A DNA stretch of 38,605 bases from Neoconidiobolus thromboides FSU 785 (lineage: Eukaryota; Fungi; Entomophthoromycota). The notes beneath the pieces were generated by a model, which had not been told where the DNA came from, ran no database searches, and saw only the letters and a list, made by a program, of their open reading frames with translations. Position 1 is the stretch's first letter; every line of letters starts with the position of its first letter. The translations under genes were made by a program, and so were the position numbers. The stretch covers positions 1 through 38,605 of the forward strand of contig MU626444.1 of assembly GCA_025603075.1 (NCBI GenBank), read 5' to 3'. Positions 8,696-38,605 of the stretch are shown here, piece after piece.

Positions 8696-9676
8696 TCAAC
8701 CTGATGCAATCAGATTTCTTTGACTATTAGGGAAATGAGCACTGCTACTAACCTCCCCATTAATAATTTTACTTCTATTCCCACCTTTCAACAGAGCAAC
8801 CAACTCATTTCTAGAATCTGGGTGTAAAGTCAACACGAATAGAGGGTTGATAACCGTCTCACTAAATAATAAAACCAAAGAGATTGAATCGATAGTATAG
8901 TCCCTTTTAAACTTTGTAGTTGTTTCTACGATCAATAAAATTAACTCTGGCATCAAAGATAAGATATAACAAAAGGATACTAAAAATAGGTACAACACAT
9001 GGTGTGATTTGTAAAACGAGGATACCTTTCTTAAGTCTCCTACCTGAGCTTTAAGCTTTTGGTTTATGTAGTAATAATGCAATGTGATCATACAATAGAA
9101 TACGGGGATAGACATGATAATTAGAAAGGTAACTATAAGCATGGTTGGACCATAGATGGAAAATAAAATTCTGTTGAGTTTTATTGGCGCCGTGATACAA
9201 AATAATCCGGATGGCATAACTTTTGGAGTACCAAAAAAGTGTGCTACTGTAAAGCCAGAGATGATAAGGACAATGGTAAAAAAGGATAATATCTTTGTCT
9301 TTGTATTGTTAATAGAGTATGATTTTACAATAGCCAAATAACGGATAATGGATAGTTGAGAAGTTAACGACAAGGCTACAATAATAGTAGAATTGAATAT
9401 AATTGAACTTAAAGTACAAACCATACTTTGTTCAAAAGCATCAGAGTCTTTGACAGTGATCCATCTGTATAATTGAGTGAATGTTAGAAAAAGAGCTATG
9501 ATGATATCAAAAAGGGAGATCAATTGTATTAATAAGCCATCAATGGCTTTATTCGTTTTACTTCTTTTATATGTAATAAATAAGACTAAACCATTTAAAG
9601 TGATTGATAACAATGAATATATAAATAAAAATATTTCAAAGCCTAAAGAGAAAGTGGTGTTAATAGCTAATTGCAT
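8696..9676 (-). CDS. Class A (rhodopsin-like) 7TM receptor, 326 aa, intronless
   Basis: Seven hydrophobic segments; TM1 LN, TM2 FD, TM3 Cys and IRY, ECL2 MPSGLFC, TM6 P, TM7 NPLFV. The ORF-track start (9736) is TTG; ATG 9676 aligns with paralog starts. Confidence 0.88.
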   Translation of the reverse strand: MQLAINTTFSLGFEIFLFIYSLLSITLNGLVLFITYKRSKTNKAIDGLLIQLISLFDIIIALFLTFTQLYRWITVKDSDAFEQSMVCTLSSIIFNSTIIVALSLTSQLSIIRYLAIVKSYSINNTKTKILSFFTIVLIISGFTVAHFFGTPKVMPSGLFCITAPIKLNRILFSIYGPTMLIVTFLIIMSIPVFYCMITLHYYYINQKLKAQVGDLRKVSSFYKSHHVLYLFLVSFCYILSLMPELILLIVETTTKFKRDYTIDSISLVLLFSETVINPLFVLTLHPDSRNELVALLKGGNRSKIINGEVSSSAHFPNSQRNLIASG

Positions 9677-10671
9677 TAAATTTATCAAAATAAGAAAAAC
9701 GAACAAAGAAGTTGGAATGTTGGTGATATGATACAAGTTTTATACTAAGTAGTTCAAAGTATCATTATATCTTTCTGAAATGTCAAGTTACTTCATACTT
9801 AAAATTCATGAGTGTTTCTGGTTTTATTTTTGTTCAATTTAGTTTAGTACAATAAAAAATAGCCATATTTAGTAGGTTGATTTAATTCTTTAGTTCTAAA
9901 TCTATAAAAAATTTAAATTATTTTTGATCCAAGATTCATTGAGTTAAATAAAGTTAAATATTTATTTTTACACAATTTAATTGGCTGTCTACTTGAAATT
10001 TATTGTTCATATTATTTGTTTATAGTTGAAATATTTATCATCTGCCATTTTAAACTTGTTTTTAAACTAAACAAAAGAATTGTTAAGTTTCAATTACTTA
10101 ATTTATAAATCCACTATTGATATTGACATAAATTTATTATTAGAGCTATATGAATCTAAGACTTAATTTTTGTATTAAAAGTTAGTCACAATACTACCTT
10201 AATTATATCATATTAGCATTAAATTACATCCTACTATTACTGTATTTATAACAAGACCTATAAAAATATAGTCTGGTCTCTTTTCAGAATATCAACAAAT
10301 TGGATCTTTTTTAGTTTAAATGGAGTACAGCATGCTATAAACTATGTACACGAAATTATATTCAACTATAATTATTTCTACTCAAACTAATACGTTGATG
10401 ATATTTAGTATAGTAGAGAGTGATTCATTTTAATAGAAACAAAAACGATACTTGGCTATGCAATCCCCCAACCAACATTTCGGGGTATCTTCTTTGCTTC
10501 AGTATCTATCTGGTAGCTTTATTTTATTATATATTAAGTAAATAATCCCTATTCTTATATTATTCTATTGTAATATATAAAATTTAAACTATTGAAAATA
10601 AACACTAATAAACCACTCTTAATTTATTAAATAAAATTTACTTATATTTTAATAATCATATACTGTATGCT

Positions 10672-11931
10672 TTATAACCATCCACTCTTTCCTTTCTTTT
10701 TTTTAATTTCAGGTCTTTTAAGCTGTTTAATTAACTCTGGCATCTTTAACATTTTTCTAACTCTAGAATTATTTAAAGCATAAATTTGGACCATAGAAAA
10801 TAAAGAGGAAGGAATCCAATATAAAAACACAACCTAAAAAATATTAATAAGCATTAAACTCTATCAATAAAGATTAAAAACTTACCGCTGGCATAGTACA
10901 AGTTACCGGAATCATACCTAATGATACCACCCTCATAAAAGTTTTCATCCATTTAGGTTGTTGTTGGGAAGCAGCACCTAATTCAGAACCCATTTCAAAG
11001 ACAGCCAAAAAACCTAAAGAGGAGATAGTTGGGAGAATATAATAAGGATCAGCGACAGCTAAATTAGTGAACCAAAGATATCCACCATCTAAAAGAGAGG
11101 GGATAGGCACATCAGCAAGTGCTCTTAAGGCTAAAAAGAATGAAATCATCACAGGGGCTTGTACAACAGGTATCAACATCATTCTAAACGGTTTTAAGTC
11201 ATGCTTTTTAAATAAAGTACGTAAGTTTTGGGATTGTAAAGCCAATTCATAATGATCTTGGTCTTTTTTAGCGCGGTTAATTTTGGCTGTTATAGCGTCC
11301 ATTTCTGGTTTAACATTGGCCATTTTTGTAGCAGATTTATTTAAGTTGATAATCAATGGTAATAAAAGAGTACGGATAACTATTGTTGTTATTCCGATAC
11401 TCGCCAACCATGGCATATGTAAACCTAAGTCAAAAAATTCTAAAATCTTTTCAATTCCTCCTACTGGAGTGTAATTGCATAAACCAAAGCTAGCGTAATC
11501 TCCTATGGTACTTAAAGCAGTTGGCTCAATACTTTGTACGGCTGTTGGTTCGCTAAATGTGGCTGTGACTGCTTCTACTGTAGTTGGTTCTGGGATAACA
11601 GTTGTTTCTGGAACAACGGTTGTTTCAACAACCTTTGGCTCTACAATAGATTCTGGTACAATTTCTTTTAATCCATTTTCGTTATCTTTTACATCTATCT
11701 GGGTACTAGCAAATCTTATGCCATTGATGGCAGCTAAGTTATAGGTAGGAAACTAAAATGTTAGCCTATTATTATGATATTTGAGTAATATACCTTATTT
11801 TTAGTTACTAACTGAGAAATTTTTATTGAAGTATTTAAACTAAATGATGGATTAAAATTATATTGTTATAAAAATTTAAGTTACCTTTTCAAAATGTTCT
11901 TTTGGTGGATCTTTAAAAGTGGTCTAATCAT
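10672..11931 (-). CDS. OXA1: Mitochondrial inner-membrane insertase Oxa1/YidC (~373 aa; exons 11931-11885, 11839-11794, 11752-10886, 10833-10672)
   Basis: PW...I..TT..IR..LLPL, Q.P...SFF.ALR and LYW..S.LFS motifs; presequence-like N-terminus ending GIRFAST; three GT-AG introns (45, 41, 52 nt) keep the frame. Confidence 0.92.
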
Positions 11932-12751
11932 ATCTATAATTCTATTCTATATTAAATTTTTTTTATAATTCAACTACAAAATTATAAATTGATTGTTTTC
12001 GATTTTTGTTCTTAATGTTTGATTCAAGTCCCATAATAAATTCGGTCCCAATCCTAGCTTTTTATGTTCTAGATATTGGAAGTTAAAGGCTACCAAATTT
12101 AGTAAATAGAAAAGGCGGCAAAATGTTTTTATTTTAAAAAGATTTCAATTTAAATAAATCTATGAAAGCTATCAGTAAGAAATAGCACAATTGCGCTTTG
12201 ATTTATTTCAAATAGTTTTGAGATCATAGAAATGTTTTAAAGTAAAGTTCTTTAAATTTCGACTGTTTAAAATAATAAGATTAAACAATGGTGTCGTCTG
12301 TAAAGCTCCACTGACTTTATTGTTTGATCGTTTAAGTTGATAAAACATTCGAGACTTATAGCTTTCAAGGATCAAGAGAGAAGTAATTTAACAAATGATG
12401 ATCAATGATGTTTTAGTAGCTGAGCGTCAAATTACAGTTGATTAAATCAGTAATCAAAGAACAATGATGTTTCATTGTCTTTACAAAAAGAACTCTTTGT
12501 ATTATTAGTCATTATCGAATATGATAATATAATAGTCCCTTTAAAAAAATTATTAATTACAGGCCTCTATTTTTACTTAACTTTTTACTGAGTAGATACC
12601 GTTTTCATAGTAGCCTTTAGACAGCTTTAGTTACGATATAGATAAATGCAAAAATATAAAAACTATACATAATCATGGTTTCTCTGTTCAATATTCTATA
12701 TGACAATGACTAAGAAATATTACGAAATTACTAATATTTAGTTAAACATAT

Positions 12752-37373: not shown

Positions 37374-37469
37374 GAAGATATATTTCTGTGTTTAAGAATT
37401 TTATTACAATTTTTCTGCTCAAATAATGTTTAGAAGGGAAAAAGTAATGAAAAGCCAAAAAAAATCTCT
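37374..37469 (+). mobile_element. MITE family 1, diverged full copy
   Basis: GAAGATATATTTCTG...AAAAAAAATCTCT; direct ATTT/ATTT flanks. Confidence 0.8.
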
Positions 37470-37886
37470 ATTTTCTAACTTTTATTCAACAGACTGCAAC
37501 CTTAAGTGCAAAAGTTGTTAGTGTTTTTTGAACAAATTTGTTTTGATTAAAACAACTTGTTTATGGGCCAATGAATTTTTACCATTGTAGCAATATACTC
37601 TTATTATATTTTAAAAATGTTAGGCTCATTTATAGAGGGCCATTTATTATTGAAATTTTTAGCAAAATTCTTAAAGGAGCTTGCGCTCCCAAGTGATTTA
37701 TCAACAAGGCTAAAAAACTTTAAAAAAGGGAGAAAGAGGCTATGAAGGCAGAGCTCCAGTTTCTGCTTTAGAAGCTACCAAAATTAATAATCTTTTTATT
37801 TTTTTTTGACATTTATTTAAACCTCAACTTCCAAATTCAACTAAGTGTTTTCATTTTGACTATTATTGTTACTTAAGCAAAAAGCT

Positions 37887-38605
37887 TCAACTTATTGGAA
37901 GTGGTGTGCGACCTATCAAATCATTACTCAAAGGATATTGAAAAGCTGAAACAGTTTGATGATGCCCATCCCCATTTCTTTCTTTCTTGAATAATTTAAC
38001 TAATTTTTTTCTAGAATCTGGAAGTAAAGTTAATACAAATAATGGATTGACTACCGCTCCACTATAAAATAAAAGGAAAGAAATACAATCTACTGTATAA
38101 GATCTTTGGTAGTAACTTGCTGCTTCAATAACCAAAATGATAAATTCTGGGAACATACAAATTAGATATAACATTGTAAAAAGGAATAAACAAGCAATAT
38201 GTTTTGATTTGTAAAATGCTACCCTTTGTCTAAGACTACCTGAACATTCCTTGAACCTTTGATTCAATTTGTAATAATGAATTGATATCAATCCATAAAA
38301 GATCGGGATACAAAGTGCTATAGGATATATTATAACAAATACAACGGTAGCATAAATTTTATGCTCTATAGAGTCATAATTTTCAGTACTGGATATACAT
38401 ATCAATCCTGACGGCATTAAACGCGATACTCCCATAGTTCCACTGATAGTAAAGACAAAGAATGCTAATAAAATAATTACTATTGATAAAAACTTGACCT
38501 TTATGTTGCTGATAGTAAATGACTTAACAATTGTTAAATAACGAACTATGGATAATTGAGCAGATAAAGCAATGGCTACAATAACAGTACTACTATTAAG
38601 TATTG
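37887..38605 (-). CDS. Class A-like 7TM receptor (subfamily B), 5' end beyond the window
   Basis: Frame is open from the window edge (ILNSSTVIVAIALSAQLSIVRYLTIVK...) through PSGLIC, FPEF and VNPLFV to the stop at 37887. Confidence 0.88.
   Translation of the reverse strand, partial: ILNSSTVIVAIALSAQLSIVRYLTIVKSFTISNIKVKFLSIVIILLAFFVFTISGTMGVSRLMPSGLICISSTENYDSIEHKIYATVVFVIIYPIALCIPIFYGLISIHYYKLNQRFKECSGSLRQRVAFYKSKHIACLFLFTMLYLICMFPEFIILVIEAASYYQRSYTVDCISFLLFYSGAVVNPLFVLTLLPDSRKKLVKLFKKERNGDGHHQTVSAFQYPLSNDLIGRTPLPIS

What the first reader, a model, noticed from the sequence alone, without database searches (positions are those of the whole stretch)
8696..38605. Cluster of eight intronless rhodopsin-like GPCR loci undergoing birth and death in an apparent fungus
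Seen: five complete genes (8696, 19178, 27868, 30848, 35402), one edge-truncated gene (37887) and two pseudogenes (17513, 33290) in 30 kb. They form subfamily A (19178/35402), subfamily B (27868/30848/37887 plus both pseudogenes) and one outlier (8696). Known: classic fungal GPCRs (Ste2/Ste3, Gpr1, PTH11) are not class-A-like, and clustered, intronless, pseudogene-rich arrays are the hallmark of animal chemoreceptor repertoires. Inference: an olfactory-receptor-like sensing repertoire, perhaps for host or prey cues.
Basis: partly seen in the sequence, partly recalled or inferred. Interest (0 to 1): 0.75.

Follow-up and report, generated by a model that had tools for sequence, protein, structure and literature searches.

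The report
Fungal rhodopsin-like receptor gene cluster
This stretch of the insect-killing fungus Neoconidiobolus thromboides holds six intact and two dead intronless genes for animal-type (class A) seven-helix receptors; they are real, but they belong to a receptor expansion in this fungal group that is already catalogued and whose ligands are unknown.

Summary
The window has five complete intronless 7TM genes and a sixth cut by the contig end. The sixth is intact once joined to contig C490, which overlaps the window end. There is also one frameshifted pseudogene and one decayed 3' relic. The subfamilies are as described.

The organism is a fungus, Neoconidiobolus thromboides FSU 785 (Entomophthoromycotina). 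The proteins are class-A-like by Pfam 7tm_1, by a full-length profile match to bovine rhodopsin (E 2e-15), and by an AlphaFold model whose 50 best PDB matches are all class A GPCRs.

The premise that fungal GPCRs are not class-A-like is out of date. Rhodopsin-family GPCRs in fungi were reported in 2012. They are now "class XV", reported enriched in Entomophthoromycotina, with 26 counted in this strain. They remain functionally uncharacterised.

Points I found in no paper read:
- This is the largest cluster I saw in the genome. It is an old, N. thromboides-only clade under purifying selection (dS ≥ 1).
- The clade has lost the acidic residue of E/DRY.
- The outward-facing half diverges faster than the inner half.
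- There is no retinal lysine.
- Three members are invisible to Pfam.

The chemoreceptor role is plausible but untested. The scan met this family before on other DNA of this genome (s1-259490).

The parts
8696..9676 (-). Intact intronless class-A-like receptor gene (326 codons from the ATG at 9676); the 'outlier', sister to a paralog on contig C139
   Evidence: Pfam 7tm_1 35.8 bits, cut-off 30.5. Groups with C139 in the tree (SH-aLRT 85). The C139 protein is named 'family A GPCR-like' at NCBI.
17513..18412 (+). Pseudogene of subfamily B
   Evidence: Homology in three frames, 52-55% identity to the B genes, 3 in-frame TAA. ATA at the position of the start codon. The invariant RY reads HH.
19178..20152 (-). 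Intact receptor gene, subfamily A (324 codons)
   Evidence: 73% identical to 35402-36376; dN/dS 0.12. No Pfam hit on its own, but aligned throughout with the family.
27868..28857 (-). Intact receptor gene, subfamily B (329 codons); the protein that was modelled
   Evidence: Pfam 7tm_1 40.1 bits. AF2 pLDDT 79.9, pTM 0.79, seven helices plus helix 8. The top 50 PDB matches are all class A GPCRs.
30848..31795 (-). Intact receptor gene, subfamily B (315 codons)
   Evidence: 68% identical to 27868-28857; dN/dS 0.20.
33463..34011 (-). Decayed relic of a receptor gene (matches residues ~113-300 only), nearest to subfamily B
   Evidence: About 31% identity with many stops. Bounded by copies of a ~100-nt dispersed repeat at 33384-33490 and 34025-34131.
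35402..36376 (+). Intact receptor gene, subfamily A (324 codons), inverted relative to 19178-20152
   Evidence: Inverted repeat I1, 932 nt at 76%, confined to the coding sequence.
37887..38605 (-). 3' two thirds of an intact subfamily B gene; the 5' part lies on contig C490
   Evidence: C490:1-209 equals window 38397-38605 at 100%. The joined frame has 329 codons and no stop.
34025..34349 (.). Two copies of a MITE-like dispersed repeat just upstream of the relic (34025-34131 and 34251-34349)
   Evidence: Repeat families D2/D4 and inverted pairs I5, I7, I9, I21.

Best explanation
The locus is a loose tandem cluster of fungal 'class XV' (rhodopsin-family, class-A-like) G-protein-coupled-receptor genes in Neoconidiobolus thromboides FSU 785. 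Old local duplications, some of them inverted, produced a clade found only in this species among the sequences I sampled. That clade is the six intact window genes plus one on C139 and two on C402. Two further copies have since decayed.

Shown here:
- The proteins have the class A seven-helix fold with helix 8 and an ECL2 hairpin.
- They keep N1.50, D2.50, the C3.25-ECL2 cysteine pair, R3.50-Y3.51, Y5.58, P6.50 and N7.49-P7.50.
- They are under purifying selection.
- They diverge more in the outward-facing half than in the cytoplasmic half.

Inferred:
- They sit in the plasma membrane, bind extracellular small molecules or peptides in the helical-bundle pocket, and signal through one of the three G-alpha subunits the genome encodes. 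The paralogs would differ in ligand specificity.
- The acidic residue of E/DRY, W6.48 and Y7.53 are missing, so the activation switch must differ in detail from the animal one.
- They are not opsins, because there is no lysine in TM7.

The ligands, and any link to host sensing, are unknown.
For: Organism: a paralog on C285 is 100% identical to NCBI K502DRAFT_368425 of N. thromboides FSU 785.

Family:
- Pfam 7tm_1 is above its cut-off for 2 of the window genes and for 8 of 16 aligned paralogs. No member hits Dicty_CAR, STE2/3 or Git3.
- The family profile matches bovine rhodopsin over residues 39-321 at E 2.3e-15, and 322 PDB sequences in all. The 60 best shown are all class A receptors.
- A profile search of 1.84 billion representatives gives 4337 hits. 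The nearest are from Entomophthora muscae and Massospora cicadina, then chytrids, then animal receptors such as a bombesin-receptor-like protein at about 1e-18.

Fold: pLDDT 79.9, pTM 0.79; Foldseek probability 1.00 and TM up to 0.80 to class A receptors only.

Evolution:
- dN/dS is 0.12-0.30 and dS is at least 1.
- The N. thromboides-only clade has SH-aLRT 99.
- Identity in the outer half versus the inner half is 0.41 vs 0.55 for the clade and 0.65 vs 0.85 for the A pair, Fisher p 1e-4.

Signalling partners: three G-alpha loci.

Genome-wide: at least 46 7tm_1 loci, 34 over the cut-off, all uninterrupted frames, several in small clusters.
Against: - There is no expression evidence for any of the eight loci. 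Exact-sequence look-ups for this genome are withheld.
- No ligand, localisation or G-protein coupling has been shown for any fungal class XV receptor (PMC13308352).
- Three microswitch residues that animal class A receptors use for activation are absent: D/E3.49, W6.48 and Y7.53. Canonical G-protein coupling is therefore an assumption.
- Greater divergence of the extracellular half is common to GPCRs in general. It does not prove a chemosensory role.
- The species-only clade rests on a library of 50%-identity representatives. That library may lack other Neoconidiobolus genomes.
Confidence: 0.85

Rival explanations
1. They are 7TM proteins of class A descent that no longer act as ligand-gated G-protein activators. 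They could be constitutively active, scavenger/decoy-like or G-protein-independent, because the clade has lost the acidic residue of E/DRY on top of the family-wide lack of W6.48 and Y7.53.
For: All 12 members of the window clade and its nearest paralogs have I/V/M/L-R-Y. Thirteen of 20 other 7tm_1 genes of the same genome keep E-R-Y. From general knowledge: in animal receptors, changes at 3.49 often raise basal activity, and atypical chemokine receptors have altered DRY motifs.
Against: R3.50, Y3.51, Y5.58, D2.50 and N7.49-P7.50 are invariant or nearly so. The cytoplasmic half is the better-conserved half, as expected if a transducer is still bound. dN/dS is 0.12-0.30.
Confidence: 0.2
2. They are receptors for the fungus's own signals (developmental, mating or conidiation peptides or lipids), not for host or prey cues.
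For: The nearest solved relatives by sequence and fold are peptide, prostanoid and opsin-type receptors, not odorant receptors. The family is also present in non-pathogenic chytrids.
Against: Six diverged paralogs in a species-restricted clade with faster change on the outer face fit varied external ligands better than a few endogenous ones. Published comparisons link receptor number to host range: C. coronatus 125 against C. obscurus 28 (PMC12387763). That link is a correlation only.
Confidence: 0.25
3. They are light sensors. 7tm_1 was used as a 'light-sensitive domain' in the Entomophthora muscae genome paper.
For: PMC11105155 counts 7tm_1 genes among light-sensing candidates. Bovine rhodopsin is the best PDB sequence match.
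Against: No lysine occurs anywhere in TM7 of any of the 12 clade members. The position aligned to K296 of rhodopsin is S/E. PMC12716839 likewise reports no retinal lysine or counterion in holomycotan rhodopsin-family proteins.
Confidence: 0.03
4. The genes were acquired from an animal (insect host) by horizontal transfer, or the contig is a contaminant.
For: Class A GPCRs are overwhelmingly animal. The genes lack introns.
Against: The closest relatives are all fungal (Entomophthorales, then chytrids), and animal receptors appear only near 1e-18. GC content is an even 24-32% across the window, receptors and flanking housekeeping genes alike. Paralogs lie on at least 25 contigs of the same assembly. 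The family is known from chytrids and Blastocladiomycota (PMC3251606).
Confidence: 0.02

Closest known systems
Fungal GPCR class 15/XV (Rhodopsin-like, Pfam 7tm_1): Krishnan et al. 2012 (PMC3251606), Liu et al. 2025 (PMC12842992)
   Same: Same Pfam family and the same taxon enrichment (Entomophthoromycotina). The conserved D2.50, R-Y in TM3, N-P in TM7 and ECL cysteines are shared, as is the 'NPxxx' form of the TM7 motif. This strain is in the published table, with 26 class 15 genes.
   Different: The 2012 fungal members, and most other 7tm_1 genes of this genome, have E-R-Y. This clade has a hydrophobic residue at 3.49. Three of the six window genes are not detected by Pfam 7tm_1 at all, so they are probably outside the published count. 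The papers I read do not describe cluster structure, pseudogenes or intron status.
Animal class A GPCRs (peptide receptors, prostanoid receptors, opsins)
   Same: Seven-helix fold with helix 8 and an ECL2 hairpin, TM-score 0.6-0.8. The alignment is full-length and in register, with N1.50, D2.50, C3.25/ECL2-Cys, R3.50, Y5.58, P6.50 and N7.49-P7.50.
   Different: Only 13-19% identity. D/E3.49, W6.48, Y7.53 and W4.50 are absent, and there is no retinal lysine. No orthology to any animal subfamily.
Vertebrate odorant-receptor gene clusters (birth-and-death evolution)
   Same: Intronless coding sequences, tandem and inverted paralogs in clusters, dead copies among live ones, and faster change on the ligand-facing side.
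   Different: The scale differs: 8 loci here and about 50-60 in the genome, against hundreds to thousands. The duplicates are old (dS at least 1) and unrelated genes are interspersed. There are no OR signature motifs and no shown chemosensory role. The resemblance is one of genome dynamics, not of membership.
cAMP receptor family (Dicty_CAR; fungal class V)
   Same: Sister family to Rhodopsin in the GPCR_A clan; present in fungi.
   Different: No member hits Dicty_CAR. TM3 has R-Y, not the N-x-Y of cAMP receptors (PMC3251606).

Membership tests
Rhodopsin family / class A GPCR (Pfam 7tm_1; fungal class XV) | Score above the Pfam 7tm_1 gathering cut-off (30.5 bits) | tested here: met
   Met for 8696 (35.8 bits) and 27868 (40.1 bits), and for 8 of 16 aligned paralogs. 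19178, 30848 and 35402 give no hit on their own but are 40-73% identical to members that pass.
Rhodopsin family / class A GPCR (Pfam 7tm_1; fungal class XV) | Seven transmembrane helices plus helix 8, with a fold matching solved class A receptors | tested here: met
   AF2 pLDDT 79.9, pTM 0.79. The Foldseek top 50 are all class A, probability 1.00, TM up to 0.80.
Rhodopsin family / class A GPCR (Pfam 7tm_1; fungal class XV) | N1.50, D2.50, and the C3.25-ECL2 cysteine pair | tested here: met
   Invariant or at least 90% conserved columns, aligned in register to N55, D83, C110 and C187 of bovine rhodopsin.
Rhodopsin family / class A GPCR (Pfam 7tm_1; fungal class XV) | R3.50 (with Y3.51) of the E/DRY motif | tested here: met
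   R is invariant in 16 of 16 and aligns to R135 of rhodopsin.
Rhodopsin family / class A GPCR (Pfam 7tm_1; fungal class XV) | Acidic residue at 3.49 (typical microswitch; not required for Pfam membership) | tested here: not met
   I/V/M/L in all 12 members of the clade and its nearest paralogs. 13 of 20 other 7tm_1 genes of the genome keep E.
Rhodopsin family / class A GPCR (Pfam 7tm_1; fungal class XV) | CWxP in TM6 | tested here: inconclusive
   P6.50 is invariant and C6.47 is present in some. W6.48 is replaced by L/M/F in all.
Rhodopsin family / class A GPCR (Pfam 7tm_1; fungal class XV) | NPxxY in TM7 | tested here: inconclusive
   N7.49-P7.50 are present. Y7.53 is replaced by V/L (N-P-L-F-V). 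This is the same 'NPxxx' form reported for fungal Rhodopsins.
Rhodopsin family / class A GPCR (Pfam 7tm_1; fungal class XV) | Ligand-dependent activation of a heterotrimeric G protein | not testable with these tools
   Three G-alpha loci exist in the genome. No functional data exist for any class XV receptor (PMC13308352).
Opsins (retinal-binding class A receptors) | Schiff-base lysine in TM7 (K296 / 7.43) | tested here: not met
   No K in TM7 of any clade member.
cAMP receptor family (Dicty_CAR) | Pfam PF05462 match; N-x-Y in TM3 | tested here: not met
   0 of 16 members match at E up to 0.01. TM3 has x-R-Y.
Olfactory-receptor-type multigene repertoire (a genomic pattern, not a protein family) | Intronless coding sequences in tandem clusters with interspersed pseudogenes | tested here: met
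   Eight loci in 30 kb, two of them dead. All 46 genomic 7tm_1 matches are uninterrupted frames. Further small clusters lie on C237, C402, C39, C218 and C75.
Olfactory-receptor-type multigene repertoire (a genomic pattern, not a protein family) | Very large family with recent, ongoing duplication | tested here: not met
   About 50-60 loci genome-wide. The closest intact pairs have dS 1.0-1.3 and no flank homology.
Olfactory-receptor-type multigene repertoire (a genomic pattern, not a protein family) | Demonstrated chemosensory function | not testable with these tools
   No expression or ligand data.

The most novel reading that the evidence does not exclude
This species-restricted clade has a hydrophobic residue in place of the E/DRY acid and a fast-evolving outer face. 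It could be a true chemosensory repertoire that an insect-pathogenic fungus uses to read host or substrate cues, working through an activation switch unlike the animal one. That would be an independent, fungal invention of an 'odorant-receptor-like' system from the same ancestral class A scaffold.
Probability: 0.25. Interest if true: 0.6.

Novelty: new member of a known kind. Interest (0 to 1): 0.35.

Why it matters
Class XV receptors are the least understood fungal GPCR class: no ligand, coupling or phenotype is known for any of them. They are most numerous in insect-pathogenic Entomophthoromycotina, where receptor number has been linked by correlation to host range.

This locus gives a compact, well-defined set of six intact paralogs with two clear subfamilies. 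That makes it suitable for deorphanisation and for asking how a class A receptor works without D/E3.49, W6.48 and Y7.53.

Two practical points follow. Pfam-only catalogues probably undercount the family. And 7tm_1 counts should not be read as light sensors in these fungi.

Tried and rejected
- Word-index protein searches, with one protein and then with the 16-sequence alignment, found only this genome's own proteins. Relatives in other species appeared only with the full HMM scan.
- Exact-sequence look-ups meant to find transcripts or other assemblies of two window genes returned nothing, because records of this genome are withheld. Expression could not be assessed.
- I looked for the missing N-terminal third of the 33.5-34.0 kb relic beyond the flanking repeats, using a permissive tblastn. 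Nothing credible turned up.
- I looked for homology between paralog flanks, which would indicate recent segmental duplication. All repeats between paralogs are confined to coding sequence.
- Opsin, cAMP-receptor, horizontal-transfer and contamination readings were considered and rejected; see the rival explanations.
- The joined window+C490 protein has no single reference. It was used only inside scripts (tree, dN/dS) and was not sent to the database tools.
- Not done: site-model tests of positive selection (too few, too saturated sequences), and a check of the reported LINE relic upstream of the pseudogene.

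
Full report
**What is there.** The window is contig C187 of a 24.6-Mb, 799-contig assembly and has 24-32% GC throughout. A tblastn of the six candidate products against the window finds eight homologous loci.

- Five are complete open frames of 315-329 codons: 8696-9676(-), 19178-20152(-), 27868-28857(-), 30848-31795(-) and 35402-36376(+).
- For the first, the ORF list's start at 9736 is a bacterial-code TTG. The paralogs align from the ATG at 9676.
- A sixth frame, 37887-38603(-), runs off the window. 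Contig C490 overlaps the last 209 bases at 100% identity and carries the missing 5' part. The joined gene is an intact 329-codon frame.
- The locus at 17513-18412(+) is a pseudogene of subfamily B. Its homology is split over three frames and it has three in-frame TAA codons. It reads ATA where the paralogs have ATG, and HH where the family has its invariant RY.
- The locus at about 33463-34011(-) is a far more decayed relic, about 31% identical with many stops. It covers only residues ~113-300 of a paralog. Copies of a ~100-nt dispersed repeat bound it.

A (19178/35402) is 73% identical. B (27868/30848/37887) is 57-68% identical. All other pairs are 40-45%. Each subfamily has SH-aLRT 100 in the tree. 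The array is loose. Between the receptors lie an Oxa1-like exon, a membrane-protein gene, a mitochondrial-carrier gene and two HTH-repeat genes.

**Which organism.** A paralog on contig C285 of the same assembly is 100% identical over 299 residues to NCBI 'hypothetical protein K502DRAFT_368425 [Neoconidiobolus thromboides FSU 785]'. Nine further paralogs are likewise NCBI proteins of that strain. The organism is therefore an entomophthoralean fungus, an insect pathogen and saprobe.

**What the proteins are.**
- Pfam 7tm_1 is above its curated cut-off for 8696 (35.8 bits) and 27868 (40.1 bits), and for 8 of 16 aligned genome paralogs. One paralog also hits the nematode Srx chemoreceptor model of the same clan. 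None hits Dicty_CAR, STE2, STE3 above cut-off, or Git3.
- A profile of 16 paralogs (alignment A1) matches bovine rhodopsin from residue 39 to 321 at E 2.3e-15, and 322 PDB sequences in all. The 60 best that were listed are all class A receptors.
- That alignment is in register for N1.50, D2.50, C3.25, R3.50-Y3.51, the ECL2 cysteine, Y5.58, P6.50 and N7.49-P7.50. These are also the invariant or near-invariant columns of the family.
- An AlphaFold2 model of the 27868 protein (pLDDT 79.9, pTM 0.79) has seven long helices, helix 8 and an ECL2 hairpin. Its 50 best Foldseek matches in the PDB are all class A GPCRs: orexin, prostanoid, opioid, NPY, neurokinin and opsins. Probability is 1.00 and TM is up to 0.80.

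**What differs from animal class A.**
- The residue before R3.50 is I/V/M/L, not D/E.
- W6.48 is L/M/F.
- Y7.53 is V/L, giving N-P-L-F-V.
- There is no lysine in TM7, so these are not retinal-binding opsins.
- The lack of W6.48 and Y7.53 is shared by the 20 other 7tm_1 genes of the genome that I extracted. Thirteen of those 20 keep E-R-Y. Loss of the acid is therefore a derived trait of this clade and its nearest paralogs.

**Relatives.** Word-index searches saw only the genome's own proteins. The full HMM scan of 1.84 billion representatives gave 4337 hits at E up to 1e-3, 525 at 1e-10 and 65 at 1e-30.
- After the genome's own paralogs, the best hits are 'hypothetical proteins' of Entomophthora muscae and Massospora cicadina, plus unnamed Logan contigs.
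- Further down come chytrids (Boothiomyces, Obelidium).
- Near 1e-17 to 1e-18 come animal receptors such as a bombesin-receptor-3-like protein of a crinoid.
- In a maximum-likelihood tree of 68 sequences, the six window genes with C139, C402a and C402b form a clade of N. thromboides sequences only (SH-aLRT 99).
- Within this genome a six-frame scan finds at least 46 7tm_1 loci. Thirty-four are over the cut-off and every one is an uninterrupted frame of 300-380 codons. Several lie in small clusters: four in 10 kb on C237, three on C402, and pairs on C39 and C218. This window's cluster is the largest of these.

**Evolutionary state.**
- Nei-Gojobori dN/dS between intact paralogs is 0.12-0.30, which indicates purifying selection.
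- dS is 1.0-1.3 for the closest pairs and saturated for the rest. DNA similarity between paralogs stops at the coding-sequence boundaries. The duplications are therefore old. 'Birth and death' describes the long-term pattern, not current turnover.
- Using the model's topology, identity is lower in the outward-facing halves and loops than in the cytoplasmic halves and loops. The figures are 0.41 vs 0.55 for the seven-gene clade, 0.65 vs 0.85 for the A pair (Fisher p 1e-4), and 0.58 vs 0.68 for the B trio. The multi-pair p-values are inflated by non-independence.
- This pattern fits diversifying ligand pockets on a conserved transducer face. It is also what GPCR families show in general.
- The genome has three G-alpha loci.

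**How it most likely works.** Shown: these are intact, constrained genes for class-A-fold receptors with the core structural residues. Inferred: they are plasma-membrane receptors that bind extracellular ligands in the helix bundle, couple to one of the three G-alpha proteins, and differ in specificity between paralogs. Without D/E3.49, W6.48 and Y7.53, the details of activation must differ from the textbook scheme. High basal activity or non-G-protein signalling is a live alternative, which I put at about 0.2. Nothing here tells host cues apart from self or substrate signals.

**Comparison with what is known.**
- Rhodopsin-family GPCRs in fungi were first reported in chytrids and Allomyces in 2012, with 'ERY' and 'NPxxx' motifs (PMC3251606).
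- Liu et al. 2025 made them fungal GPCR class 15. They found 984 across 1357 fungi, 'concentrated in Entomophthoromycotina', and list Conidiobolus thromboides FSU 785 with 26 (PMC12842992).
- The E. muscae genome paper counts 99 7tm_1 genes and treats them as light-sensing candidates (PMC11105155).
- A C. coronatus genome paper reports 125 putative 7TM receptors, 112 of them sorted into rhodopsin-like/7tm categories, and ties them to host range (PMC12387763).
- A 2026 review lists class XV as uncharacterised, with no function, ligand or coupling known (PMC13308352).
- A 2025 eLife study also notes that holomycotan rhodopsin-family proteins lack the retinal lysine and counterion (PMC12716839).
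- NCBI already names the C139 sister gene 'family A G protein-coupled receptor-like protein'.

Its novelty is small.

**What I found in none of the papers I read.**
- The cluster anatomy with its two dead copies.
- The intronless state across the whole family.
- The species-restricted clade that has lost E3.49.
- The asymmetry between the outer and inner halves.
- Three of the six intact window genes (19178, 30848, 35402) give no Pfam 7tm_1 hit at all. The Pfam-based count of 26 is therefore probably an undercount, against at least 46 loci here.

**Earlier notes of this scan.** The same family was met before on another contig of this genome (s1-259490), with the same conclusion that the expansion is catalogued. 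I checked that conclusion independently in the literature. Notes on the rewired switches (s1-259572), on the extracellular divergence of subfamily A (s1-259690) and on the repeat-flanked relic (s1-259571) agree with my tests. For the relic I confirm the flanking repeats, but I could not detect receptor sequence beyond them.

**Verdict.** This is a real, correctly described gene cluster. It is a new, somewhat derived set of members of a known but functionally blank fungal receptor class. The olfactory-like function is a reasonable hypothesis without evidence yet.

Noticed in passing
window 253-351, 581-679, 688-794, 3013-3119, 5623-5721, 6832-6938, 7139-7245, 12758-12864, 21236-21299, 33384-33490, 34025-34131, 34251-34349, 37375-37473: A ~100-nt AT-rich dispersed repeat (MITE- or SINE-like, in both orientations, 61-89% identical). 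There are at least 13 copies in 38 kb, three of them around the receptor relic.
   Followed up: partly
window 24503-25681(-) and 25788-26867(-): Two adjacent genes for acidic proteins that carry repeated short helix-turn-helix modules. These match Phage_CI_repr, HTH_17 and MerR models, which are usually bacterial or phage. They sit in the middle of the receptor cluster.
   Followed up: no
window 7268-7858(-): An ORF with a hydrophobic N-terminus and two Kunitz/BPTI protease-inhibitor domains (E 2e-18). This is unusual for a fungus and of possible interest in an insect pathogen.
   Followed up: no
window 38397-38605 = G000:C490:1-209: The end of this contig and the start of contig C490 overlap by 209 bases at 100% identity. 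The two contigs can probably be joined, which completes the sixth receptor gene.
   Followed up: yes
window 19178-20152, 30848-31795, 35402-36376: Three intact receptors give no Pfam 7tm_1 hit even at E up to 1. Pfam-based catalogues of fungal class XV receptors therefore probably undercount this family.
   Followed up: partly
G000:C237:4935-14406: A second cluster of four 7tm_1 genes in 10 kb. These keep the E-R-Y motif, unlike the window clade.
   Followed up: partly
window 3600-5115: Nested direct and inverted repeats of 230-300 nt at 85-95% identity (D5, I2, I23). They look like LTR remnants.
   Followed up: no
window 1236-1616(-): A small ORF encoding a single C2 domain (E 1e-20).
   Followed up: no
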